From Auanema rhodensis (taxonomy: Eukaryota; Animalia; Nematoda): a stretch of 64,000 nt of DNA. Position 1 is the stretch's first letter; every line of letters begins with the position of its first letter. Below are positions 3,901 through 19,087 of this stretch, in pieces. The stretch lies in assembly GCA_964057225.1 (NCBI GenBank), contig OZ059898.1:9300001-9364000 (forward strand), in the 5' to 3' direction. The notes under the pieces are model-generated. The model made no database searches, was not told the DNA's origin, and was given only the letters and a program-made list of their open reading frames with translations. The position numbers and the translations under genes were made by a program.

Positions 3901-6221
3901 ATTTTGATATTTATCTAGAGATTAGTTATGCATATATATGTATATACATACATATCTATACATTATACATGCATACGATATATGTACATATTGATGTATA
4001 TCTACATGTGAATTCGATAAGTTTTTTGATACTTATGTTTTTGGATGAATACGACGACTAAAATTGTGTATTCACAATACACGAATTTTCTTTCACAAAC
4101 AATAGGCTTATGAGCATTGTAAGGATCAGATTATACTGATAATTAACATTTTTATTCCGGCTTTTCTGCAGTCATGGCTGAAGCTGCCATCTGAAATTAA
4201 CGAATTGTTAATCCTAAATCCTCCATTCCAGTATATTTGAAATACATATTTTTGATATTATCCTGCTCAATTTTTTATGGGGAATAGTAAAAAACATGTT
4301 GTTAAACACAAAAATTAAAACATTTATAATTAAGAATATTTGTTTGAAAGAAATATTAAAAATATGAATAAAAACATATGTGAACTTCAATCAACGTTTC
4401 ACAACAAGCTATTTCATGTATATGAAATGTTTCAAAATTTCAATTTTACTGTTCTTCTGGCTGTTTCTTATTATATTTCATCTTTTTTTCTTCTTTTTGG
4501 TCATCTTCATTTTCTTTTTAGCGAGCATCTGCTTAAGCCTAATTAGGTTCTAAGCTGTGAGTAGCCCTCTCTCACTCTGTTCCTCTTGTTTTACTTTTCA
4601 CTTCACTACTCAACCAGGTTGCTTAAAGTTTAGCATAAAAAAGAAGGGAAAGCCGACAAAAAGTCTAAAACCATGCTATATATATACTATATAAGTGTAT
4701 AACTAAAAGAAAATTAACAACCATTGTATTAAACTTTAATTTCAGATATTCTGCAATGATGAAACCATCTCGATATGCTGACCAGTCGTTAACAAGATGC
4801 AAATGTTGGATTGTATTTAGTTGGATAACATCTTTGTTATTATGCTGTCCAATAGTTGTAGCTCAAATGCAGGTAAAATAATATTTTCTTATTTTTCTTC
4901 TAATTATTGAAGTTGAAATCTTCTTTCAATTTGTTTCATAATTTTCATTACAATTTCTTGTGAGAAAGCAGATGTTTTAAGCATTTTCACACAAACAAAA
5001 GTTGTAACTCTTGTGCATAATTTCTCTTTCTCTCTTCTTCCATCACGTAGTCCATGTCCTCAACTACTGGAATGCCCGCCACCCCTACACAAACTAGGGA
5101 ACATAGTGATGATACCTTGTTGCAAGGGGCGTTGTGGGGACTAGAGCTGATTGAATTTATTTATTTATTTCGCAACTATAATTTGTGGATTATGAGCAAA
5201 AACAATATTTTTAGAAAAGACTAGTTGCTGAACTCGTTTATAAAGAAAATCATGATAATGCGTTAAAGCAATTTTGAATAAAAATTCAATGTTTTTATTA
5301 TTTGCTGTGTTTATTTATAAAAATAACGAAATAAACATCATTGATAAATGTTATTATAGGTTGTCTTCTATGAAGATGCTCAGCTATGTGTATTAGATTG
5401 GACAGCAACTTCAGCATACAGTTTAACTATAATTTTACTTGTCTTTCTACCAACTTTAGTAACTGTTTTCAATACTGGATATAAGATTATGAAAGCTATG
5501 AGATACCCAGATGAGGTAAGAACTGTTACTCAACTTTTTTTCTTGAATTCAAATAGTTCTGAATGATACAATTTTTGGGATACACATATTGAATAGACGC
5601 AAAAGTCTTCTATTCCAGTTTTGCATCAGATGATGATGATGATGCAGACTCATTTAGAACCAATGTTTCCAAATAGAGCAATTTAATAAACTTTCACATT
5701 CCGGCTCCACTAGTATGTGTGCGATTCCTTCAATAAAACAAATATTATAAAAGAAAAGCATATGCAGCTTATATTTAAAAAGCTTGTTTAGTGTATAGGG
5801 AAAGAACATACGAATAATATTAAATAAATATTAATAAAGCATATTTTAGTTAGAAGATAGTCAACGTATGGTAATTGAAACAGATCCAAACTTTGTTTTA
5901 ACCATGTTTCTTCTGGTAGCATTTGTGATGTCATGGATGCCTCTGTTGTGTTTGAAAGTATTTGAATACATAGTTCCTCCACAGCCTGATACGGATCTAT
6001 CATTGGTACTTTACATTCATATTACTAATCATAATTTGATTTATCTTAAGGTTACGTTTATCTTCTGTTGGTTAGCACTAGCCGGTCCATCATCAAAATT
6101 TCTTATTTATATGTTTATCAATAGTTCATACCGTAGCAGCTTTTTTAACATTATTTCTTGTTGCTGTTTCTTTCGACGTCGTCAAGAGTATCGAGATATT
6201 GGATTCAATTCCTATTTATAG
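977..6221 (+). CDS. Orphan class A (rhodopsin-like) GPCR, about 317 aa, 8 exons
   Basis: Exons 977-1051, 1300-1383, 2506-2596, 2721-2814, 4746-4872, 5360-5515, 5850-6005 and 6051-6221 join in frame through GT-AG introns. Motifs: TM2 [10 protein letters not shown]3 CIDRY, TM4 W, TM6 SWMPL, TM7 KFLIY, and a C-terminal Cys cluster. Confidence 0.9.
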
Positions 6222-7509
6222 TTATTGATTACCAATACTATGATGTCCTTACTAATTCTCAATTTTTACATTGAAAGATGTTGATTGCCCTGAGGGTATC
6301 ATGTCCAAATCAAGTTATAATCACGATAGGCAGCAAACACTGGCCTATTTAGTTCTATTTAGTTTGCAAGCTATTCGGTTTTATTTCTGAGAATGTTTAT
6401 AAACATTTTCGGGATCTTTCTTTGAACACAGTGATGTGCTAAGAGTTACTATCACGAACAAAGTTTAAGCTAATCCAAACTGAATTTTGGTTTTTGAAGG
6501 AAGTTATTTGAACTATTTCTATATCCTGTTCGTCTACTTTTCTTTAGTTCTGGACTGTTGGGTACAGTCATAAAAATTTGTTTCGGGTTTTCTACGAAAA
6601 AGACCACCAAACCACACAACTTTAGTTTTGCTATTTGCTTTGATTTCCATAATTTTTTATTCTAAAAACAATTTAAATGCAATGTCATATATTAACAACG
6701 CATTCTGAACTGTTTTTCAATTATATTATGAGATTGACTGCTCATAATTATTGACTGACAGAAAGAATCATTTCATTACAACGCAATTATGAATAAACTT
6801 CTGGAACTCATTCTATCGCCTCTTTTCTCTTTATTTTCTTTTTGTTTTCATTCTCTTCTCCCTACATCTTTTATGCTCTTTCTCTCTTCATCTTCTATTG
6901 TTGCACACATTCGTGCTCTCCCTAATATTTCTATTTCTCTCATATTCTTTATCTATCAAGGTGTTTATTATACTGTTTATTAGATATTTTGTGGGACAAA
7001 ACAAAACTACTATATTGCTCATATACAAATGCTCCTCAACTGTATCCTTTTATCTGTTATTCATTTAATCCTGTTTTCACAACATATTCAAGAAAACTAT
7101 CTATGTGGAATTTTGTCAAAAGAATAGAAATAATTAAGAGCGTATAAGAACTTTGATGAAAAACAACAAAATGCTTTACGTTGAAAATTATATTTGAATC
7201 TCTTGTTAATTTTTATTATATTTATTCATTTAAGAAAAAAAAACTGTTATACAAATTCTTATTTACTGTTTATCATCACATCCCACATAATGCTCATTAC
7301 AAAAAGAAATGATACAATGAATTTCTTATTTTGTAAAATAGCTATTGGGATTCAAAAAGAAATGTATTATTAGTTAAGAACCTTTATATTTGTATTAACA
7401 GAATTCTATTAATTTTTAATAAATATATATGTATTTAAATAAATAAAAAAAAACTATTTTAAAGTATTTTTTTATATTCTTATATATATAATGAGTAGCA
7501 AAATTTTTA

Positions 7510-8780
7510 TTAAGTATGTCTCCGAGTAGGTAATTCTAATCCTGATGGCAGTATATGTGAGGGAGCAGTAATTGATTTCCAACAGGATTTGATTGTATTG
7601 TACTTCACATTTTTCTGAATCTGAAAACAAATTTATTCAACCGGTAATGAATAGGAGGCTTAATTTACTTCTTTGTTTCTACATAGATAAACCATAGAGT
7701 TAACACCACTGTATGCTATCAGCATCATAATTGTTAAAGCATCGAAATATTCTGAATCGTGCAGTCCAAGAAATGGAAATCCAAAGAAACTCATCCAACT
7801 TATGGCATATGTGAGAAATATTAATAAGAAATGGAAACAAGCCCTGAATAAATTAAGTATTTAAGAAACTTCGTATTGAGTTCTCACCAAATCTCTTGCT
7901 TAGTAACGTCTAGCTTACTTTCACGTCTAAGCCGATATATATGTGAGAAGATCTGAATAGAGATATATGTTCATTCTCCATATTTCAAATTTTTTAATAA
8001 ACGAACAGCTATATATGATGATGAACTTATTACAGTTGCTATTACATCAATTGGAAAATCAAATATCAGTAAAGAAATATTTGTTTCAGTAGCATTATGA
8101 GGCATAAAGGTATAGCCAATATGATTTGGGTTTACAATTAACCTAAATTTGATCTGAAAAGTGAATAATTTGCTTTTATTAAACCTGCAGCAAGGTGATA
8201 AGAATTGAGCATATATGGTCATAGTTGATGATGATATGATTACAGCTAATAAAATGATATAAACACGTTTTCTTGTAAATATTTGTGATTTAGGAATTAC
8301 AATTATACAAAATCTAGTATGATAACATATAAATGACATCTTAAAGTTAATACCTATTAATGGCCATAACTATCTGAATGTAACTTCCAACAAACCAAAA
8401 TTGAATAAATAGAACTGATAAAACGGTAACAACGAAATAGTTCGTACTAGAAAAAATTTTATCCTGTGAAAGAAAATATTTAATTATTATCATTTTAAAG
8501 TATGAAACTTCGTGAAGTACCGCCATAGCTATATAAAATGAATGAATAAATAATTGTAAAGTATCAACAATCATATTACTTCCAGTAATCAAATATACTG
8601 GATTATCTTTTAAAGCATATAATTTTCCCCTTAAAAATATTTTAAAATTTATTTCTTATTATATATTATAATTATTTTTTACTTATATATGCTGTAAAGA
8701 CATAAAAGATTAGTACAAATAAATGTCCATATTTCTAAATTCAGGATAAGCGTTAATCCCATGCGTATTACAGGTTCCAT
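7510..8780 (-). CDS. Nematode serpentine chemoreceptor, Srx-like
   Basis: Spliced hydrophobic 7TM product starting MEPVIRMGLTLIL. Contains QIVMAINR|F, IFTRK and PCC, plus NISLLIFDFP, all typical of the Srx family. Confidence 0.75.
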
Positions 8781-10142
8781 TATGCAAAATTGGATCTAGA
8801 ATAGATGTAGATATGAATATTGATAAATCTATAAACAAGAATTTTAAAATTTTAAAGAAAATATGAAACATATCTTCAAGATGTTATAAAATAGGTGTTA
8901 ATATTAAAAAAATTTCATTCTTCAATAGGTACAATTATTTTATTTTTGTATTTTATATGAGAAAGAATCTAATATCTATCTCTAAGTTTACAATTAATTT
9001 TACAATTTGTCTTTTATAAACTATATATTTAATACAATACTTACAATTCATGTATATACAGATTGTATTTTTAAAAATTTTTGTAGTTAACCAAAGTTAA
9101 CATGTTGTTTTTAATGAATTTGCGTCATATTTCTTGACCAACTTAAGGATTTAGCAAAACTTGTTTGTTAAAAGTATACAAAAAATAAAGAAAATATGAA
9201 TAGTCGTGGTTAGGTGTAAAGATAACATAATGGATGTACTTTAATAGAATTTCACTAATATTTTATTATTCATATATTATATTTCCGATATTCTTAACTT
9301 CTTTTTTTACAAAAATTTCACTTTCCTTGTGGCTGGTCCAATTCTTCTTGAGTGGTGATTGGTCAAATCGTCGTCATCTGCGCCACAGGCGTTCTTCTTG
9401 CTGTCGTCCGTAAAATTTCATTCATTCACTTCGCTTCGCTTGACCCATATTACAACTATCCATATATCGTTTACATTTCGCTCATTCAGTTCGCTTTTCA
9501 TTTCTTGACAACAGTTGAAAGATTATCATTTCAACTTGTTTCACACTTTCTTTGAAGATTTCATCGTTTTGTCGTTTGTTGAACCTATCCTACTATATCA
9601 TAATCAAGATAAGTGTTTTCAAACGTTATCCAATGTAAATCATACAATAAGCAATGAATCAGTTAAGACAACTATTTTATCCATTCAGTTTCATATCATC
9701 ATTTCTAATCTAGCAACCTCATTGTCTCAAACTTGTAAGACTTTTTAACAAATTCCTTCCTGTCCTGTCTATTTTAAGCTAAACTATCCGTATTGGCTAA
9801 AACTATCCGTATATTGCAAAAAGCCTATCGCAACAACAGATTTATTAATTTCAATATGCGATCTATTCTAAAAACTTCAAAAATCGGTTAATTTGTGTAT
9901 TTTTTGTACTAATTAACTATTGTATTGCAATTTCTTCAGATACATTCTATTAAATACGACATTCGATTATACTATCGACTGACCTTTTTCGGAAATTGTG
10001 GTTACGGTCAATAGATCTATTTTCCACAATATTGCTGTCCCATATATTTCTTTCCCTTTCGTCTAATTATTTTGAATTGGAATGTAAAATTCGATAATTT
10101 TTACTTTGATTTCAATAAGTACATATGTACATATGAAAATAA

Positions 10143-10623
10143 GGCGCTGGTATTGTTTCGCCCACCCCCCCCCCTAATAATCAGAGAGTTAACATTAGAG
10201 CGCGCTTATAACATTTTGGGCACACACCAGCTTTGCATAAACTAGCGGGAGTGCTCTATCCCAGATCCGGGGGGTCTGGGGGGGTATCCCCCCCAGATAG
10301 AGAAAGCTTCAACAAAATTTAAAAGTATTAAACTCGCAGAAATGAGACTGTATTTTCGAGTAAATAACGCATGATCTAAGATAACATTTTGGGCACGCAC
10401 TAGCTTTGCATAAACCAGCGGGAGTGCTCTATCCCAAATCCGGGGGGTCTGGGGGGGTATCCCCCCCAGATAGAGAGGGCTTCAACAAAACTTAAAAGTA
10501 TTAAAAGTATCAGAGAGAGCACTCCCACTCGCAGAGATGAGACTCTTTATTTTCAGGTAAAAAACGCATGCGCTCTAATGTTAACTCTTAGGGGGGGGGG
10601 GTGGGCGAAACGATACCAGCCCC
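10143..10623. mobile_element. Non-autonomous DNA transposon (MITE), Merlin-like
   Basis: Imperfect terminal inverted repeats of about 55-60 bp: GGCGCTGGTATTGTTTCGCCCAC(C)nTA...AGAGTTAACATTAGAGCGC on the left and GCGCTCTAATGTTAACTCT-TA(G)nTGGGCGAAACGATACCAGCCCC on the right. Exact 8-bp direct repeat GAAAATAA at 10135-10142 and 10624-10631. No coding capacity. Confidence 0.9.
10208..10570. repeat. Two-copy internal tandem duplication (period 173 bp) inside the MITE
   Basis: ATAACATTTTGGGCAC starts at 10208 and again at 10381. Each unit contains the hairpin TCTGGGGGGG-TAT-CCCCCCCAGA. Confidence 0.9.
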
Positions 10624-10677
10624 GAAAATAATTATAAATACTAGAAAGTTAAAAAAGAATCTTACAGGTAAACCTCA

Positions 10678-12675
10678 ATGGAGGTTCGAAAACGATTATC
10701 TAATACAGAATTGGATGAATGTAATAATCATAAATTGATTAATTTTAATAATAATAATATAACAAAAGAAAACAATGAACTTAAAACGAATACTAAGCCA
10801 GAAAGAAAAACAAAGGATTTTAAAGAGAAAGTTTTTGTTGAACGAGAATCTCTCTTAACGTAAGTATCTAACATATTTTTAAAAAATGTTTTGATTTCCT
10901 ATTTATAGAACCCTTATTCGGGATGGAGAAATGCGCATTGTTTTCAACTTTTTTATGGCCATTTTTATTCTTTTTTTCCTTCGAGCTATGATTGATGATA
11001 TTTTTGTTCATAAAATGTAAGTTTTCTGATATCCACGTGTTTTACAAAACTTTTTCATGTTGTTCTTTGTTAAAAATATTCTATCTATCTTCTTCAGGTT
11101 GTTTCATCACACATGGCTTATATGGTGGAATTTTCAATCTTTTCCGGAAACAATGTTTGTATGGTCTATCCTTTTTGCTTCAACTTTTATTCCTTATAAA
11201 ATATTGAAAATTTGGTCTTCATATCCAGCAGATAAACAAACTATTCGTAATCAAGTAAATTAATTTTTAATCTTTTTTTATCTAAAAGGACACATTTAGG
11301 GATTTGCTTTACTATTCGCTTATTCGATTTATTTCGTTAGCTTTTTTTATTTTTCTTTGAAATTTCTTTATGGTTGGGAACTCAAATGTGCATGTTCATT
11401 CATTATAACATGTGAGACGGTAAGAAAAATCCTTTCAAACCACGATATTGATGAGAATAAACTTTCTTTTAGACAAGATTAATGATGAAAGTACATTCAT
11501 TTTTACGTGAAACTGTACCAAAAGTATTAAATAAAAAGCTTCTATTGAATTCTAATGTAAGATTTTTTAAAAATTGTTTTTAATACAAATTTATGTGTTC
11601 AGAAAGATGACAATATTACATATCCAACTGTTAACCAATATGTCTATTTTATGTTCTGTCCTTCATTCTTGTATCGAGATGAATATCCAAGGTTTTTTTT
11701 TGAAAAACACAAAGCTTTTAGTTATTTTACAACTATTTAGATCTAAAACACGCGACTGGAAAGTGGTAGGTTATTATTTTGCGCAGTGTTTCATAGTAAT
11801 CGAATGTGTAAATTTAACTTTTACACAATATGTGCAACCTTGGTTAAGTGATGTTGATGTAAGAAATCTTTTTTTTTTAATGTCATCAATCCACCTTTTT
11901 CCAGTTATCCTATATTTCTATTTGTGAAGGATTTTTGAACATCTTCGCTGCTATTCTTCCAGGAATAATATGTCTACTTTGTCTCTTTTATGGACTTCTA
12001 CACTGCTGGCTCAACGCATTCTCTGAAATGCTAATGTTTGCAGATAGACAGTTTTATATGGTATAACTGCATAACAAATTTTAATTTTAATTTCAATTAT
12101 TAGAATTGGTGGAGTTCAGATAACATGGCTGAATATTATCGTAACTGGAATCTAGTAGTACATGATTGGTTATATGCTTATGTTTACAAAGACGTATCCA
12201 ATGTATAAGTTTTTAATTTATTTATTACTATATCTAATAACATTTACAGCTTATAACTGGAAAGAAAGGATTAAAAATAGCTCAAATTTGTGTTTTCTTT
12301 TTATCAGCTATTTTTCATGAATATTGGTTTGGTGTAGCTTTCCGAGTATTCTACCCAGTTATGTTCATGTTGTATTTTGTATTCGGAGGTAATTCAACAT
12401 TTGAAATAAGAATATGAATCATTATCTATATTTCAGGAATATTTTTCTCAGTTTCTAGATTAATTAGAAGCAAAGCTGCTTGGAACACAGCACTTTGGTT
12501 TAATCTCCTTATTGGTTAGTCTTTCATAAATCTTTTTAAAATACCAACTTCATTAGGTACGGGTATGTTTGTTGCTTTCTATGGACAAGAATGGTATGCT
12601 AGAGAGGAATGCAAACCAAATTCAGGAGTTGTATCAGATAGTTTACTACCACGTCACTGGACATGTGTATATTGA
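10678..12675 (+). CDS. mboa-1: Sterol O-acyltransferase (SOAT/ACAT, MBOAT family)
   Basis: Spliced product contains [66 protein letters not shown], catalytic SAIFHEY and QEWYAR. Confidence 0.93.
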
Positions 12676-13883
12676 AAAATCTAATAACCGTAAACAATAA
12701 TTTAGATTCAAAAATAGAATAAATATTATATTTGAAAGTCTTTTAGTTTTGTTAGAATTATAAACAGTTATCTATTTGAAACGTTTTGTTTATTTTATGA
12801 ATTGATATGCAATTAATTGATAACATTGAGTCTAAATGAACTTAATTCATGAGTTTTTCTACATTCATCTATATGAAAAATACTAAAATATTCCGAAAAA
12901 AATGTTTTTGTAAGCGAAAAACATTAAATTTAAGACCTGTTTTATCTAACTTTTAACAATGAACCAACAAATTTCTTTCCTTTCACTATTCCACATGTGC
13001 CACATTTAGTTATAATGACCTTCTGATATAGTTCAGAAGATATGATATTCTTTCAGTTTTTAATATAATTTGCCTTCTCATTAAAATATTTATTTAAAAA
13101 ATAACTTTCAGCAATATATTTTATTTTGAACTTCTCAACTATAACAACTTTATCTTAAGAACCATCTCTCTCCTTCATCAGATTATTCAAATGTTTTCAA
13201 ATCTTACAATGAGAAGCAAGAAGTCATATGCGTACTTAACTTATACTCGTTTTGTTCAAATTCTTAATATATTGAGAAGCAAAAAAAATATTGTCTCATG
13301 TTAGTTTCTCAACTGGATTTCTATGCACAACCTAACAACGCATTCCTTGATGCGGTGCCGGACTGTTGAGCACAACTACAGCTAATCTTCAAATCCAACA
13401 CTTTAACTCTATTCTTTCTTAATTATTCGTTTATTCGTCTCTTCTAACGTAATTAGCTATACAAATTGGATCAATTACATAACTTTCACAACTAATTATC
13501 AAGTCCGTATTGTCACTGATCTATCATTCTTATCAACATCCCTTACAATCGCTAACAAATCAGAACACTCGATGATCAGGAAGATTGGATAGCGGTTAGT
13601 CAATCCAACTTCATCTTGGAATAAACGTTTCATCTATATTCGCTATATGCTTGTGATGAAACTCAACTAATTTTCTATCAGTTTTTATCTAATTCTTATC
13701 CAAGTTTCTAAAAGCATTTTTCTCAGCTTTGTTTATAGATTTATTCGAAGTCAATATAATTTTTTTTTATTTTTAAGAGAGACGTTCACAATTATGAAAT
13801 GTCTTTATAGTAACAGGCACATTTGCAATTCTTCGTGTCGTTTTGCAAATCTTTAATATATTATTATCTACTTTTGTGTTCAG

Positions 13884-14792
13884 ATGGCAAATAATGGTAA
13901 CCGTGACATGTACTCTACCAAACGCATTATTATTGTTTTTTTCATATTCCTATTTCTGGTTGGATTCCCAAACTCTCCAAATATAAAGGTGACTCAGATT
14001 AAACTTTTAAATGATTAACGGAAGAAATCGTATGTAATAACTCATTTTGAAGCTAAGAAATATAATACTGGATTGATCAGTTTTATTCATGACCATTGTT
14101 AAAATATAAATTTTAATATTTACCAATTCTGTAATAGTTACAGACAAAATCGTTCACAGCATATACAATCGCAGTGGCAGCAACTAGTATTTTCATAGGA
14201 ATAGCTTTTGCATTATATGTTCGCACGTTTTCGAAATATATCGGAAATAATACAGAAGTAAGTTATATCAAATTTTCTATTAAAATTTAAATTTGAGTCG
14301 TGAATTTCTTATTTTCCACTTATCAAACAGTGATTTCAATTATAATTTTCTCTATTATAAAAACCACGCTATGATTTGTCATCACACATGTACTTAAGAA
14401 AATATCAACTCTATAGTACAGAATTGTACACTTAGAAATATTCAAAACTATTGTTTAAAAATTAGATTGATTAATCCGCATTTTTTTCTTTTGTTACGAA
14501 ACATGAGAGAACTAGTTAATCTCTCAATATTCTGCAGAAGAAAAGCTAATCTCATTCCTACAGGCGAATGAAACTCCAGCAGTAGAAACAGATTTATCTA
14601 CCAACCCGCCGTCATATGATGTATGCTGTAAGGCCTCGCCCGCATGTCTTCCTACATACGAAGAAGCATTAGCCACAGCAAATCCTATTAAAGTGGTTAG
14701 TATTTTTTAGTTAATTCTAATGAAAATCAATTAATTGAATTTAGGCGGTTCAAGACGAAACAAAGATACATCAACCACCTGCAACACCGTGA
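13884..14792 (+). CDS. Small membrane protein with cytoplasmic PY motifs (PPSY, LPTY)
   Basis: Exons near 13884, 14144, 14543 and 14744 encode hydrophobic segments (IIIVFFIFLFLVG; TIAVAATSIFIGIAFALYV), then NPPSYDVCC...LPTYEEAL, and end PPATP*. The first intron boundaries are uncertain. Confidence 0.6.
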
Positions 14793-15589
14793 ACTATGGC
14801 GCTTCTAATGAGCTAGATTTGATTAGAAATTATAGACAATGTAAAAAAAATTGAGAAAAAATTGTAAATAAATTATAGCTTTAAACTATCATTTTATGTA
14901 AAAAAATATTTAAAACAATGTTTTAAAAATTTGCGTTTTGTTGCATTTCGATAAGAAATAAAGGATAAACAATAAATCAATTTCTGAATTGCGTTTATAT
15001 TTTTTAATTGATACAAATATATGTCTTCAAGATCAGATGTTTAAAAAATAGATGAATAATTATGCAATATATAGTAGAACAATGTGTAGTTAACAAAATC
15101 CAATCACTTAGGAAGCATATTATAAATCACTTTCAGTATAACAACAGGTAGAATAACTGATCCCACGCTATCATTTCATCACTTATGACATACTGTATTT
15201 TTCTCATGCTCTATTGCTAACTGCTTTGCATTAGCCGCTTCTTTTCAGTTCAAATCTGCATATATCTCAATTATCAACAAAACTTTCGGGTAATTTGCAT
15301 ACGTTTTTAAAGATTTTCATGTATTTCCCGATTTGGAGAAAATAATATTCATAATGTTCTCATTCTTGTATTTCATACATTTTTCATTCTATAACATTTA
15401 GCAGTTTATGGCAGTTGTCTTCCTGACAGATATTTCTCTATGATATTTCTATTAATTTAATCCTGGATGTTTTTTTCAGTTTTTTTTACAATTCAACAAA
15501 CGCTCTGGCAGAAGAAGTGTTTTTTATTTGAAGCTTAGAGATTAAGTGAGTTGTATATCTCATCTCTAGAATATCATATATTTTAGATA

Positions 15590-18500
15590 ATGAGGGTCGG
15601 AATTATTATTCAATTGAAAATCTTAATTTGTTCTGTTGTGATAGGTGATTTTTTTTTAATTTTAGAATAATGTTTAAATTTGAAGGTGAAATGGCGTTTA
15701 ATAAGACTTGTGATTCTAAATCTTGTGCATTCGGAAGGTGTATTGTGGATACTAATTCAAGAAAAGGTTATAGATGCGAATGTGATGAGAAATTTAAGGT
15801 TTTTGACGAATTTTCATCGGTTTTTAATTTCCTTTAGGGTGAAAACTGCGATATTGATGTAGATGAATGTTTACGATCAGATGTGTGCTATAAGGGAACT
15901 TGCCGAAATCTAATTCCAACTAATATCAATGAGAAGTAAGAAATAAATCTAGAACTAAAATTAGGTAATTGACAGAGGATACGAATGTGTGTGTCCTGAT
16001 GGCTATTCTGGGCAAAAGTGCGACTTTGAAGATAACTGTGCTAATCATACAGTTTGTTTGTTATTTTTTCATCTTTAATAATAGTTTATTTTTATGCTGA
16101 TGAAGGATATTGTAACAACGGGATTTGTCAAGATGGTTTTTGTGCTTGCATGGATGGATGGGCTGGATTTCATTGCAATCATGCTGTCCCTCCTAGGAAA
16201 TATTTTTCTAGTTGCTCATTTTATAATAATTTACTAAATAAAATTATTACTTATAGGATGCTCCCGTTCTGAATCAGTTGTTGATTTCTGCCTATCTTCA
16301 TATGGAGATGGCAAATGTGATCTTGAATGTGCCCGAGAAGAATGTTTTTATGATGGAATGGATTGTATTCTAAAAGAAACTAAAAATGGAGATGTAAAAG
16401 CAAAGTGCTTGAATACAGATTACTGTAATCAAGTTTTTGGGGATGGTCATTGCGATCCTTCTTGTAATAGTCCTCAATGTGGCTTTGATGGTGGTGATTG
16501 CAATGTAGGTCTCTATATCTCATTTTTATATTGTTATCATTTTACAGTCGGTTTATAACCTCCTCGATTTGCAACTCCTTGCTATAACCATTAAAAGTCG
16601 TAGGCATGACATTGCTAAAAGCATTAGGGATGTTCAAATTACTATTTCAAGGGTTGGTGTGAACTTATAAGCTCTACTATATTTCTATTTCTATTACAGT
16701 TGCTATTCTCTCCTTTCGTAAAGGTTGCTTCTGATCATATTGGTGATCTTATTTACGAATGGAAACCTACTGAAGGTTCAGAGTCTCTAACACTAAATGA
16801 TATTGGAGATAGAATAAATGTAAAGCCCGACCTTTCAGTATCTGTAAATGCTAGCGATTTAACAAAGTTTTATTTTTGTCATCTTAATATTTGGCATCCT
16901 ATGTTTTAGACTCGTTGTTTTCTTTGATATTGCTTCTAACGACTGCTTAATGCGAAAAGAAAGAATACAAAGTGAACTCAATTCAACTTTAAATAAGGCT
17001 AATTGCTTTGACAGGTACAATTAATGTCATATAGTATTCAATGCTTTGATTAAGTGTTAAAACTGCTTCTCGTTATTTAAAAAACGAATTAGTGAGGAAG
17101 CCGGAGAGTTTAGAATTACTTGGGGATTCAGTTCAGATCACCGATGTGAAAGTTTATAAGGCACAGGTGATATGATCAAAAAAGTAAAATATAATATTTT
17201 CTTTATTCAGGCTCCTTCATGGAGGTATCGATTATACTGGTTTTTGTTTGGATTGCTTTGTGCTGCTCTGATGTATATTACTTTGTATACTGTAATTGTT
17301 CACTTGAAAAAACAGAAGAAGCGCAAAGAATGTTACGCTCCTATATGGAACATTCCCAAACAATCTCCTATGTTTAAAAATGGTAAAAATCATATATCTT
17401 CATATTAAATGCCTTAATTTTAGAAAATTTCACTTCCTTTTCACCTCCTTCACTTTATGAATGTTCCCCAAAGAAAGATCTGGGCACGTTTCAGTCGCCA
17501 TCGTTCCATGACAATTATTGTACATTTCCGTCTTATGAAGGTAAATGGCTGTCAATTCTCTTTTGCTCTAATTATTTTGTAGAAGAGCCCCCTTTAATCC
17601 AAGCTGTTAGACGGTGCGATATTGAAGCTGTTACAAAAATGATCAGAAGCCCTGATACTGTTATTGATTCGGTAGTATCGACATAGTATCCTTAGCATTG
17701 TCACTTCTTTTGCAGGTTGACAGTCAAGGTTTGGGAGTTTTGCATCATGCAGTTGGAAACAACGATTATAATATGTTGAAGTTATTACTGGAAAGTGGAG
17801 AATTCGACGTTTGTTTATTTTGTTGATTCTGACATTGTTTGATTCTAGGTATTTGAAACTAATAATAATGGACAAATTCCCTTAGTTTATGCGGCTAGGA
17901 TTGGGCATCCTCAATTGGACTCATATGCTCTTTTGATTCATGCAATGGAGAAACGAAGGTTTAGTAGCGAATCATCTGGAGGTGACAGTTCTGACTCTGC
18001 TTATGAATCTTCAAGGTTTTCGAAAATCTTTGTTTCTGTGAATATTGCAAATTTATTAAGAAGAACCAATTTACCGTTATCCGGAGAGTTTGGTGCCGCA
18101 TGGTCATTATGTGACGATTCAGTAACATTTTAGATTAGTAGTTTTAATGTTTTTTTTCTTTAAGGGTCGAAACTCAGTACATTATGCTGCTATTAACAAT
18201 CTGCATCATTTAATTCATTATCTTGTTGCATATGGAGCTAATCCTTCCTTACGTGATGGGAAGGGAGACTCACCTCTGCATTTAGCATGTAAACACGGTC
18301 ATCTGGATGCAGTTAGAACATTATTAAATTGTAATGCAGATTTAGCTGTTGTAGACGGAGATGGTCTGATATATTTCATACCTATATCATTTTATTAATC
18401 TTAGATTTGACTCCCTTTCAAGTTTCCATGAGGTATGGACATTGGGATATCTTGCAATATATGAAGTCGGGAAGAATTACCTACACCCCGGTGTCGCGCT

Positions 18501-19087
18501 CCAGAAGAATAAAGGTAATTTTGTTTTATTTTTATTATTTTATTTGTGTCATCTTTCAGCGACCAAGAGTTATATCTTCTTTTATTTCGGAATCGGATAG
18601 TGACTATAATAGCTTTGATAAAGAAGGTGATTCTTTTTTTGTTTGTTTTTGATTTTAAAATTTGAATCAACTGTTTAGAAACGATTAAAAGAGCAAGGAC
18701 TTTGGTTGTTCCATTATCGAGCAAAAAAAGTTTACCCCTTTCTCGAGGCCCTCCACTTTATAGTATAGAAAAGTAAATTCTTACATATATCTTGGAACAT
18801 TCACTTTTTTTCAGCGAAGTTGATACTTTAATAAATAACCGATACGACTGTCTTAATGATTCTCAAAGTACTGAATCTAATTCTGCTGTATATAATCCCT
18901 TTATTTTGACACCGCCTGCTCAGTTATTAGGACTGAGTAATTCGACATGCCGTTCTAATACGTTACCATCCTGTGCTAATGCATCGAATTACTGTTAGTT
19001 TTTAGTTTTTTTTTTATTCAAATGGGATTTTTAGATTATGACTACACGAACTCACTGAGTCAGCCGCGAAGTTTTGATTTACACTAA
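15590..19087 (+). CDS. Miniature Notch/LIN-12/GLP-1-family receptor (signal peptide, 3 EGF, 2 LNR, NOD/NODP-like, TM, RAM-like, about 6 ANK, PEST)
   Basis: Signal peptide MRVGIIIQLKILICSVVIG. EGF repeats CDSKSC..GENC, DVDEC..GQKC and DNC..GFHC. LNR repeats C..YGDGKCDLECAREECFYDGMDC and C..FGDGHCDPSCNSPQCGFDGGDC. NODP-like VFFDIASNDC...CFDSVKTASRYL. TM, then KKRKECYAPIWNIP. Ankyrin repeats such as GRNSVHYAA and GDSPLHLAC. C-terminal LTPP. Confidence 0.88.

What the first reader, a model, noticed from the sequence alone, without database searches (positions are those of the whole stretch)
15590..19087. Mini-Notch receptor with only 3 EGF and 2 LNR repeats
Seen in sequence: an apparently intact spliced ORF with signal peptide, 3 EGF, 2 LNR, a heterodimerisation-like region, TM, RAM-like segment, ANK repeats and PEST. 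The signal peptide abuts EGF1 and the upstream gene ends at 14792, leaving little room for hidden EGF exons. Established: Notch receptors have 3 LNRs, and even the short C. elegans GLP-1 and LIN-12 have 10 and 13 EGF repeats. Inference: this is a radically reduced paralog. With most of the ligand-binding array and one LNR missing, it could be leaky or ligand-independent, use a non-DSL ligand, or act as a modulator or decoy.
Basis: partly seen in the sequence, partly recalled or inferred. Interest (0 to 1): 0.85.

Follow-up and report, generated by a model that had tools for sequence, protein, structure and literature searches.

The report
Natural mini-Notch receptor in a nematode
A free-living-type nematode genome carries, next to its normal 20-EGF Notch gene, a second expressed and evolutionarily conserved Notch receptor stripped down to 3 EGF repeats, 2 LNR modules and 6 ankyrin repeats, which gives a natural test case for how little of Notch is needed to work.

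Summary
Window 15590-19087 (+) is a 22-exon gene whose 2.7-kb spliced transcript is present in four public runs. It encodes an intact 864-aa type I membrane protein with these parts:
- signal peptide
- 3 EGF repeats (the middle one calcium-binding)
- 2 LNR modules
- an HD-like region
- a transmembrane helix
- a W-containing RAM-like motif
- 6 ankyrin repeats
- a short tail

No further EGF or LNR motif exists anywhere in the 64-kb window.

The organism is a nematode with SL1 arrays. The same contig carries a canonical Notch (~20 EGF, 3 LNR) 73 kb upstream.

A syntenic ortholog with the same 21 introns exists in Auanema sp. JU1783 (869 aa, 70% identity). Synonymous sites are saturated and dN is 0.24, so the gene is under purifying selection.

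Alignment shows LNR-A, the furin S1 loop and ANK1 are missing. The RAM WxP is changed to W-N-I-P. An AlphaFold model of the ortholog's LNR-HD region matches human Notch NRR crystal structures.

The premise needs softening. Strongylid nematodes have unnamed 4-EGF Notch paralogs, and Pristionchus Notch has 2 LNRs.

Verdict: a real, new, extreme variant of Notch. Its mode of signalling is untested.

The parts
15470..15545 (+). Non-coding 5' exon, spliced to 15587. It contains no ATG.
   Evidence: joint 15545->15587 (GT..AG) in all four contigs. Sequence read.
15590..15644 (+). Start codon and signal peptide (MRVGIIIQLKILICSVVI).
   Evidence: first ATG of the transcript. The hydrophobic N-terminus is conserved in kind in the Auanema ortholog.
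15706..15849 (+). EGF1 (aa 26-60), interrupted by intron 15799-15837.
   Evidence: Six Cys with the CxC...C pattern. Weak Pfam hEGF match. Joint.
15850..16021 (+). EGF2 (aa 61-104), a calcium-binding type (D-I-D-V-D-E-C ... N ... Y), interrupted by intron 15936-15975.
   Evidence: EGF, EGF_CA, cEGF partial matches; EGF signature at 15986-16021; joint.
16037..16176 (+). EGF3 (aa 110-141), a short teneurin-like EGF.
   Evidence: EGF_Teneurin E 2.1e-6, above cut-off; signature at 16141-16176.
16052..16095 (+). Intron 4, with non-canonical GT..AT ends.
   Evidence: joint 16051->16096 in all four contigs; the Auanema ortholog has TTTTTAG at the same place, the window has TTTTTAT.
16259..16366 (+). 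LNR1 (aa 154-189). It aligns to LNR-B of canonical Notch. It is preceded by a retained A-B-linker-like 'PRKYFSRC'.
   Evidence: PF00066. Alignment.
16403..16504 (+). LNR2 (aa 202-235). It aligns to LNR-C.
   Evidence: PF00066, 47.8 bits. Alignment.
16505..17166 (+). HD-like region (aa 236-398, five exons). It has no R-x-K/R-R furin motif and a 16-residue insert between the two conserved HD-C cysteines.
   Evidence: aligns to NOD/NODP of other nematode Notch; no Pfam NOD/NODP hit; the model of the ortholog matches human Notch1/2/3 NRR structures; no furin motif.
17232..17306 (+). Transmembrane helix (aa 406-430), followed by the KKQKKRK stop-transfer cluster.
   Evidence: nearly identical in the ortholog; aligned to the TM of other Notch.
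17337..17357 (+). RAM-like motif A-P-I-W-N-I-P (aa 441-447). Canonical nematode Notch has A-P-x-W-x-P-P.
   Evidence: Alignments. Conserved as APIWKIP in Auanema.
17583..18472 (+). Ankyrin domain (aa 496-720). Six repeats align to ANK2-ANK7 of canonical Notch. ANK1 is absent.
   Evidence: Ank, Ank_2 E 1e-12 to 3e-13. (ortholog). Alignment.
17930..18121 (+). Serine/acid-rich insert between ANK4 and ANK5 (aa ~583-631), including the 61-nt exon 18061-18121.
   Evidence: absent from all other Notch in the alignment; the same 61-nt exon occurs in Auanema.
18497..18571 (+). Basic NLS-like cluster SRSRRIKRPR after the ANK domain (spans intron 18515-18559).
   Evidence: identical in the ortholog. The NLS role is inference.
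18897..18917 (+). P-F-I-L-T-P-P motif in the tail, resembling the L-T-P-P phosphodegron of Notch tails.
   Evidence: conserved in the ortholog. Long forms have PLTPPHSDG. The degron role is inference.
19085..19087 (+). Stop codon. The transcript contig continues to about 19141.

Best explanation
SHOWN. This is a functional, selectively maintained member of the Notch/LIN-12/GLP-1 receptor family that has been reduced in every module. It keeps:
- 3 EGF repeats (one calcium-binding)
- LNR-B and LNR-C, but not LNR-A
- an HD that still folds like a Notch negative regulatory region
- one transmembrane helix
- a tryptophan-containing RAM-like motif
- ANK2-7
- a basic cluster and an LTPP motif in the tail

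It coexists with a canonical ~20-EGF Notch. It arose by an old duplication followed by a burst of change (stem branch 2.6-3.3 changes per site). It has since evolved only slightly faster than the long gene.

INFERRED mechanism.
1. The small ectodomain binds a membrane-bound ligand, most simply one of the at least 4 DSL proteins encoded in the genome. It would do so through EGF1-3, much as two or three EGFs (11-12) are the core ligand-binding unit of fly and human Notch.
2. Pulling on it opens the two-LNR/HD lock.
3. An ADAM protease cuts near the conserved 'ITDVKVYKAQ' strand, and gamma-secretase then releases the intracellular part.
4. That part enters the nucleus and acts with the single CSL/LAG-1 protein, probably with altered affinity because RAM and ANK1 are changed.

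It would reach the surface as a single chain, because it has no furin site.
For: Expression and intact ORF.

Ortholog: CAI4227407.1 (Auanema sp. JU1783), 869 aa, 69.6% identity. It has the same 21 introns and nearly the same exon lengths. Four upstream genes are collinear.

Selection: dN 0.24 overall and 0.11 in the ANK domain, with dS saturated.

Domains: LNR x2 and ANK by Pfam.

Homology: residue-level alignment of LNR-B/C, HD-N, HD-C, TM, RAM and ANK2-7 to 36 Notch proteins.

Structure: an AlphaFold2 model of ortholog residues 108-402 (pLDDT 74, pTM 0.72) has human Notch1/2/3 NRR crystal structures as its only significant hits (E 1e-11 to 7e-9, TM 0.64-0.70 by target).

Phylogeny: the pair sits inside nematode Notch (95/83; 100/100 for the pair).

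Constraint pattern: the best-conserved stretches are HD-C and the juxtamembrane region, the TM, the RAM-like segment and ANK. That is what constraint on regulated proteolysis and nuclear signalling would predict.

Pathway partners: the genome encodes at least 4 DSL loci and one LAG-1/CSL locus.
Against: - No experiment and no binding prediction supports ligand binding, cleavage or CSL binding.
- The canonical RAM tetrapeptide (hydrophobic-W-hydrophobic-P) is not intact: it reads I-W-N-I, with P one place later.
- ANK1 and most of the RAM-ANK linker are missing, and a 49-residue insert sits in the ANK domain.
- Pfam NOD/NODP models do not match, even on the whole ortholog.
- The AlphaFold model was built from an alignment of Notch NRRs, so it leans towards that fold.
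- The EGF part is the least conserved region (dN 0.35).
- The O-fucose and O-glucose consensus sites are not conserved between the two species (read).
- The transcript data are assembled contigs of one study. They give no tissue, stage or level.
Confidence: 0.5

Rival explanations
1. Modulator, decoy or CSL-independent receptor. The protein is made and conserved but does not drive CSL transcription. It could titrate ligands or pathway proteases away from the long Notch, or signal through other partners of its divergent ANK domain and serine-rich insert.
For: The RAM WxP is altered. ANK1 and most of the linker are missing. There is a lineage-specific 49-residue insert in ANK. The post-duplication branch is very long. 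Only about 2 intron positions are shared with other Notch genes.
Against: The tryptophan and its flanks, the basic cluster after ANK and ANK2-7 are strongly conserved between the two species. A pure ectodomain decoy would not need them.
Confidence: 0.25
2. Ligand-independent or tonic receptor. Loss of LNR-A and of most EGFs leaves a weak lock, so the receptor is shed and cleaved at a basal rate set mainly by its expression level.
For: LNR-A is precisely absent, while the A-B-linker-like segment and LNR-B/C remain. There is no furin loop. In C. elegans and human disease, activating mutations cluster in the LNR/HD region (established knowledge, from memory).
Against: HD-C and both LNRs are under strong constraint (dN 0.17-0.23), and the model keeps the NRR fold. 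As I recall, published deletion work on human Notch NRR found that removing LNR-A alone was not enough for activation. Three EGFs with all cysteines conserved argue for a binding function.
Confidence: 0.15
3. Incomplete gene model. The real protein has more EGF or LNR exons, through alternative 5' exons or an assembly collapse.
For: Only assembled contigs, not raw reads, were available. Eight of the joints were not listed by the tool.
Against: The contigs start in a non-coding exon with no ATG and have zero coverage upstream. No EGF or LNR motif occurs on either strand of the 64-kb window. The independently annotated Auanema ortholog has the same start, exon count and lengths. The locus is single-copy in the genome.
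Confidence: 0.03
4. Decaying duplicate (pseudogene) that happens to be transcribed.
For: A non-canonical AT acceptor in intron 4, and a very long branch.
Against: The ORF is intact over 22 exons in two species whose synonymous sites are saturated, with 70% protein identity. The AT-ended intron is spliced in frame in all contigs.
Confidence: 0.02

Closest known systems
[quoted passage not shown]
   Same: Same overall order of parts: signal peptide, EGF, LNR, HD, TM, RAM, ANK, tail. LNR-B/C, HD, TM, RAM tryptophan and ANK2-7 are homologous residue by residue. The mini form is placed inside nematode Notch in the tree.
   Different: - 3 EGF instead of 10, 13 or ~20
- no LNR-A
- no furin motif
- W-N-I-P instead of W-x-P-P
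- no ANK1
- RAM-ANK linker about 45 instead of about 110 residues
- insert in ANK
- 864 aa instead of 1295-1625
- almost all intron positions differ
Strongylid 'short Notch' predicted proteins: Haemonchus contortus V3C99_013911, Nippostrongylus brasiliensis Q1695_002870, Necator americanus RB195_014629, Ancylostoma ceylanicum Y032_0025g1253
   Same: A second Notch paralog beside a long one. It has a very short EGF array (4), and most members have no furin motif in HD. Length is about 1005-1016 aa. A tree joining them with the mini pair is not rejected (AU p 0.0585 and 0.085).
   Different: They keep all 3 LNR, Pfam-detectable NOD/NODP, the canonical A-P-V-W-I-P-P RAM, ANK1 and the long linker. 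They share most intron positions with long Notch, which the mini form does not. The best tree does not join them to the mini pair.
Pristionchus Notch (P. pacificus PRIPAC_73428, P. entomophagus PENTCL1PPCAC_27416)
   Same: Also only two LNR modules.
   Different: The missing module there is LNR-C, not LNR-A. They have about 9 EGF and a canonical RAM.
Engineered minimal Notch receptors (synNotch-type cores; own knowledge, not tested here)
   Same: They show that the NRR plus the transmembrane segment is enough for force-dependent release of an intracellular domain. The natural mini form keeps just that core plus a very small binding head.
   Different: Engineered receptors keep all three LNRs and replace both the binding head and the intracellular domain. 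Here the parts are native, and one LNR is gone.

Membership tests
Notch / LIN-12 / GLP-1 receptor family | Array of EGF repeats including calcium-binding ones in the ectodomain | tested here: met
   Three six-cysteine EGFs. EGF2 has the D-x-D-E-C ... N ... Y pattern. The number is far below any described member.
Notch / LIN-12 / GLP-1 receptor family | Three LNR modules (A, B, C) | tested here: not met
   There are two PF00066 matches only. Alignment shows that B and C are present and A is absent.
Notch / LIN-12 / GLP-1 receptor family | Heterodimerisation domain (NOD/NODP) forming the negative regulatory region with the LNRs | tested here: inconclusive
   There is no Pfam NOD/NODP match. However, the region aligns to the HD of other Notch. 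The AlphaFold model of the ortholog matches human Notch NRR structures only (E 1e-11, TM 0.64-0.70). The model was built on a Notch alignment.
Notch / LIN-12 / GLP-1 receptor family | Furin (S1) site in the HD loop | tested here: not met
   There is no R-x-K/R-R between LNR2 and the TM in either species. It is present in the long forms. This feature is not universal in the family.
Notch / LIN-12 / GLP-1 receptor family | Single transmembrane helix followed by a basic stop-transfer cluster | tested here: met
   aa 406-430 plus KKQKKRK, aligned to the TM of other Notch.
Notch / LIN-12 / GLP-1 receptor family | RAM motif hydrophobic-W-hydrophobic-P shortly after the membrane | tested here: not met
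   A-P-I-W-N-I-P, against A-P-x-W-x-P-P in all other nematode Notch aligned. The W is kept and the P is displaced by one place.
Notch / LIN-12 / GLP-1 receptor family | Seven ankyrin repeats | tested here: not met
   Six repeats align to ANK2-7. There is no counterpart of ANK1.
Notch / LIN-12 / GLP-1 receptor family | Descent from Notch genes (tree placement) | tested here: met
   The pair lies inside the nematode Notch clade (95/83 and 88/86), on a very long stem.
Notch / LIN-12 / GLP-1 receptor family | Ligand-induced S2/S3 cleavage and CSL-dependent transcription | not testable with these tools
   This needs experiments. The genome does encode DSL ligands and one CSL.
Strongylid short-Notch subfamily | 4 EGF + 3 LNR + canonical RAM + ANK1-7, with introns shared with long Notch | tested here: not met
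   Architecture and intron positions differ.
Strongylid short-Notch subfamily | Common origin (one clade) | tested here: inconclusive
   They are not joined in the best trees, but a joint clade is not rejected (AU p 0.0585, 0.085). Long branches are involved.

The most novel reading that the evidence does not exclude
The mini form is a fully working, ligand-gated Notch receptor. Its 3-EGF head and two-LNR lock would then define the smallest natural unit able to bind ligand, stay autoinhibited and signal. It would run in parallel with the canonical receptor in the same animal, for example as a dedicated channel for one ligand or tissue. Alternatively, it has become a tonic, ligand-independent source of Notch-type nuclear signal. 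Either would make it a natural counterpart of engineered minimal Notch receptors. Together with the strongylid 4-EGF paralogs, it would reveal an unrecognised second class of Notch receptors in rhabditid nematodes that the C. elegans lineage lacks.
Probability: 0.3. Interest if true: 0.8.

Novelty: new variant of a known kind. Interest (0 to 1): 0.62.

Why it matters
Textbook Notch receptors carry 10-36 EGF repeats and three LNRs. How many of these are truly needed for ligand binding and for keeping the receptor locked has so far been explored mainly by engineering.

Here evolution has made and kept a receptor with 3 EGFs, 2 LNRs, no furin site and 6 ankyrin repeats. It has done so for long enough that synonymous sites between the two known carriers are saturated.

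One carrier belongs to Auanema, a culturable genus used for genetics. Knockouts, tagging and reporter assays are therefore realistic.

The finding also shows that nematode Notch diversity is larger than the C. elegans pair suggests:
- strongylid parasites have a 4-EGF paralog
- Pristionchus lacks LNR-C

Tried and rejected
- Hand splicing of the EGF3 junction with canonical GT-AG sites failed. The transcript contigs showed a GT..AT intron instead.
- Pfam on single exons, and on the whole ortholog, gave no NOD/NODP match.
- A full-library HMMER search with the LNR exon found only one close relative, P0003.
- Other hits from that search had LNRs near their N-terminus (P0135, P0192, P0141, P0062, P0150, P0125). 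They lack signal peptides, start inside EGFs or have longer cluster mates. I rejected them as 5'-truncated ORFs of ordinary Notch.
- A word-index search with P0003 found no further mini form.
- A numerical dN/dS could not be given because dS is saturated.
- AU tests of a common clade with the strongylid short forms were inconclusive.
- Intron positions gave no support for that clade.
- A literature search found no paper on Auanema Notch or on short nematode Notch paralogs. The Caenorhabditis study PMC6457397 infers a 13-EGF ancestor for that genus.
- The scan's earlier notes held nothing on Notch in this genome.
- I did not attempt a complex prediction with CSL. No CSL protein of this species was available by reference.
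- The spliced 864-aa protein has no reference. It was therefore used only inside scripts. Tools that need a reference were given single exons or the ortholog P0003.
Full report
**What the sequence is.**
The window has 31.9% G+C and many 39-47-nt GT-AG introns. The whole assembly is 181 Mb in 112 contigs, and the window is contig 6, 9,300,001-9,364,000. It contains about 3,450 exact copies of the nematode SL1 leader in tandem arrays, so the organism is a nematode.

**Gene model and expression.**
Four public runs of one 2019 study each hold a single 2.67-2.73 kb contig that lies on the gene in spliced form without any mismatch.
- The 15 listed joints match a hand-built model.
- The remaining junctions follow from the positions of the listed pieces within the contigs, and from the exon lengths of the annotated ortholog.
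- The transcript starts in a non-coding exon (~15470-15545, no ATG) spliced to 15587.
- The first ATG is at 15590 and the stop is at 19085-19087.
- There are 22 exons, and the CDS is 2595 nt, giving 864 aa.
- Contigs give no coverage between 14968 and 15468.
- A motif scan of both strands of all 64 kb finds no EGF or LNR pattern outside this gene.
- The gene is single-copy in the genome.

Hidden exons, assembly collapse and lack of expression are therefore not supported.

**Domain content.**
- Pfam on the exon translations gives two LNR modules (E 6.5e-21), EGF-type matches and ankyrin repeats.
- A CxC...C count that returns the known 10 and 13 repeats for GLP-1 and LIN-12 returns 3 here.
- EGF2 has the calcium-binding pattern.
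- The rest of the protein follows in this order: an HD-like region, a transmembrane helix (aa 406-430) with a KKQKKRK cluster, the motif A-P-I-W-N-I-P, six ankyrin repeats, a basic cluster SRSRRIKRPR, an acidic serine-rich stretch and a P-F-I-L-T-P-P motif.

**What is missing, by alignment with 36 Notch proteins.**
- The two LNRs align to LNR-B and LNR-C. LNR-A is precisely absent, while a segment like the A-B linker (PRKYFSRC) remains.
- There is no R-x-K/R-R furin motif in the HD loop.
- The canonical W-x-P-P of nematode RAM is W-N-I-P.
- The RAM-ANK linker is about 45 instead of about 110 residues.
- ANK1 has no counterpart.
- A 49-residue serine-rich insert, partly encoded by a 61-nt exon, sits between ANK4 and ANK5.

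**The HD fold.**
Pfam NOD/NODP models do not match, even on the whole ortholog. An AlphaFold2 model of ortholog residues 108-402, built on a 35-sequence alignment (pLDDT 74, pTM 0.72), has human Notch1, 2 and 3 NRR crystal structures as its only significant matches in the PDB (E 1e-11 to 7e-9, target TM 0.64-0.70). This supports an NRR-like fold. The caveat is that the alignment consisted of Notch NRRs.

**A canonical Notch is present.**
PF00066 matches only two loci in the genome: this gene, and one 73 kb upstream on the opposite strand. That gene has about 20 EGFs, three LNRs, a TM, A-P-T-W-Y-P-P and ANK repeats. In trees it is sister to the long Notch of Auanema sp. JU1783 (100/100), and both are sister to strongylid long Notch (97/98). 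The genome also encodes at least four DSL loci and one LAG-1/CSL locus.

**Conservation.**
- A full-library HMMER search with the LNR exon found one close relative, CAI4227407.1, an unnamed 869-aa protein of Auanema sp. JU1783.
- It is 69.6% identical overall and has the same 21 introns, with nearly identical exon lengths.
- It lies downstream of the same four genes in the same order.
- Synonymous sites are saturated. dN is 0.24 overall, 0.11 in ANK, 0.17 in the LNRs and 0.35 in the EGFs.
- The most conserved parts are HD-C and the juxtamembrane region, the TM, the RAM-like segment and ANK.

The gene is therefore under purifying selection and is not a pseudogene.

**Origin.**
- In two maximum-likelihood trees of the LNR-to-C-terminus part, the mini pair is monophyletic (100/100). 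It sits on a stem of 2.6-3.3 changes per site, inside nematode Notch, but unresolved among rhabditid lineages.
- Since the two species split, the mini gene has changed only about 1.3 times as much as the long gene (path 0.37 against 0.28).

So there was a burst of change followed by constraint.

**Context that tempers the surprise.**
- Strongylid parasites have a second, short Notch: Haemonchus, Nippostrongylus, Necator and Ancylostoma all carry one.
- It consists of a signal peptide, 4 EGFs, 3 LNRs, NOD/NODP, a canonical RAM and ANK, in about 1005-1016 aa.
- Pristionchus Notch has only LNR-A and LNR-B.
- A clade of mini plus strongylid short forms is not in the best trees, but it is not rejected (AU p 0.0585 and 0.085).
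- The Nippostrongylus short gene shares most intron positions with the long form. The mini gene shares only about two.

A common origin remains open.

I found no paper describing any of these short forms.

**Mechanism.**
What is shown is an expressed, conserved, minimal Notch-family membrane protein with an NRR-like core. That it is activated by ligand, cut by ADAM and gamma-secretase, and acts with CSL is inference from homology and from the pattern of conservation. I put this at about 0.5.

The main rivals are a modulator or CSL-independent role (0.25), suggested by the altered RAM and ANK, and a tonic, weakly locked receptor (0.15), suggested by the loss of LNR-A. An incomplete model (0.03) and a pseudogene (0.02) are essentially excluded.

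**Verdict.**
The 'reduced paralog' reading is supported, and the functional guesses remain open. This is a new, extreme variant of a known receptor family. As far as I could find it is undescribed, and it is experimentally approachable in Auanema.

Noticed in passing
window 16052-16095: Intron 4 of the gene ends in AT instead of AG (TTTTTAT|G). All four transcript contigs splice exactly there and keep the frame. The Auanema ortholog has TTTTTAG at the same place. This is either a true non-AG acceptor or a single-base difference or error in the assembly.
   Followed up: partly
G000 contig C3, 6.74-6.77 Mb and 14.13 Mb (loci L006-L008): About 3,450 exact copies of the 22-nt SL1 leader in tandem arrays of 252-bp and 341-bp units. 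This far exceeds the ~110 copies known from C. elegans (own knowledge).
   Followed up: no
G000 contig C6, about 9,240,000-9,248,000, minus strand (L005, L009), 73 kb upstream of the gene and outside the window: Canonical long Notch gene with about 20 EGF repeats, 3 LNRs, a furin-type site, APTWYPP RAM and ANK repeats. Its closest relatives are the long Notch of Auanema sp. JU1783 and of strongylids.
   Followed up: partly
proteins P0237, P0246, P0317, P0318, P0346, P0316 (Haemonchus, Nippostrongylus, Necator, Ancylostoma, Trichostrongylus): Strongylid parasites share a second, short Notch paralog with a signal peptide, 4 EGFs and 3 LNRs. Most members have no furin motif. In the databases these proteins are unnamed or 'hypothetical'.
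   Followed up: partly
proteins P0283, P0284, P0280 (Pristionchus pacificus, P. entomophagus): Pristionchus Notch proteins have only LNR-A and LNR-B. LNR-C is absent in the alignment and in Pfam.
   Followed up: partly
window 5800-14800 compared with locus L011 1-9150: Four genes upstream of the mini-Notch are collinear with the Auanema sp. JU1783 contig: a 7TM receptor, an unnamed gene on the minus strand, an MBOAT acyltransferase and a small 113-aa gene. Nothing downstream of the gene matched.
   Followed up: partly
window 18061-18121: A 61-nt exon encodes part of a lineage-specific serine-rich insert inside the ankyrin domain. The same exon length occurs in the Auanema ortholog.
   Followed up: partly
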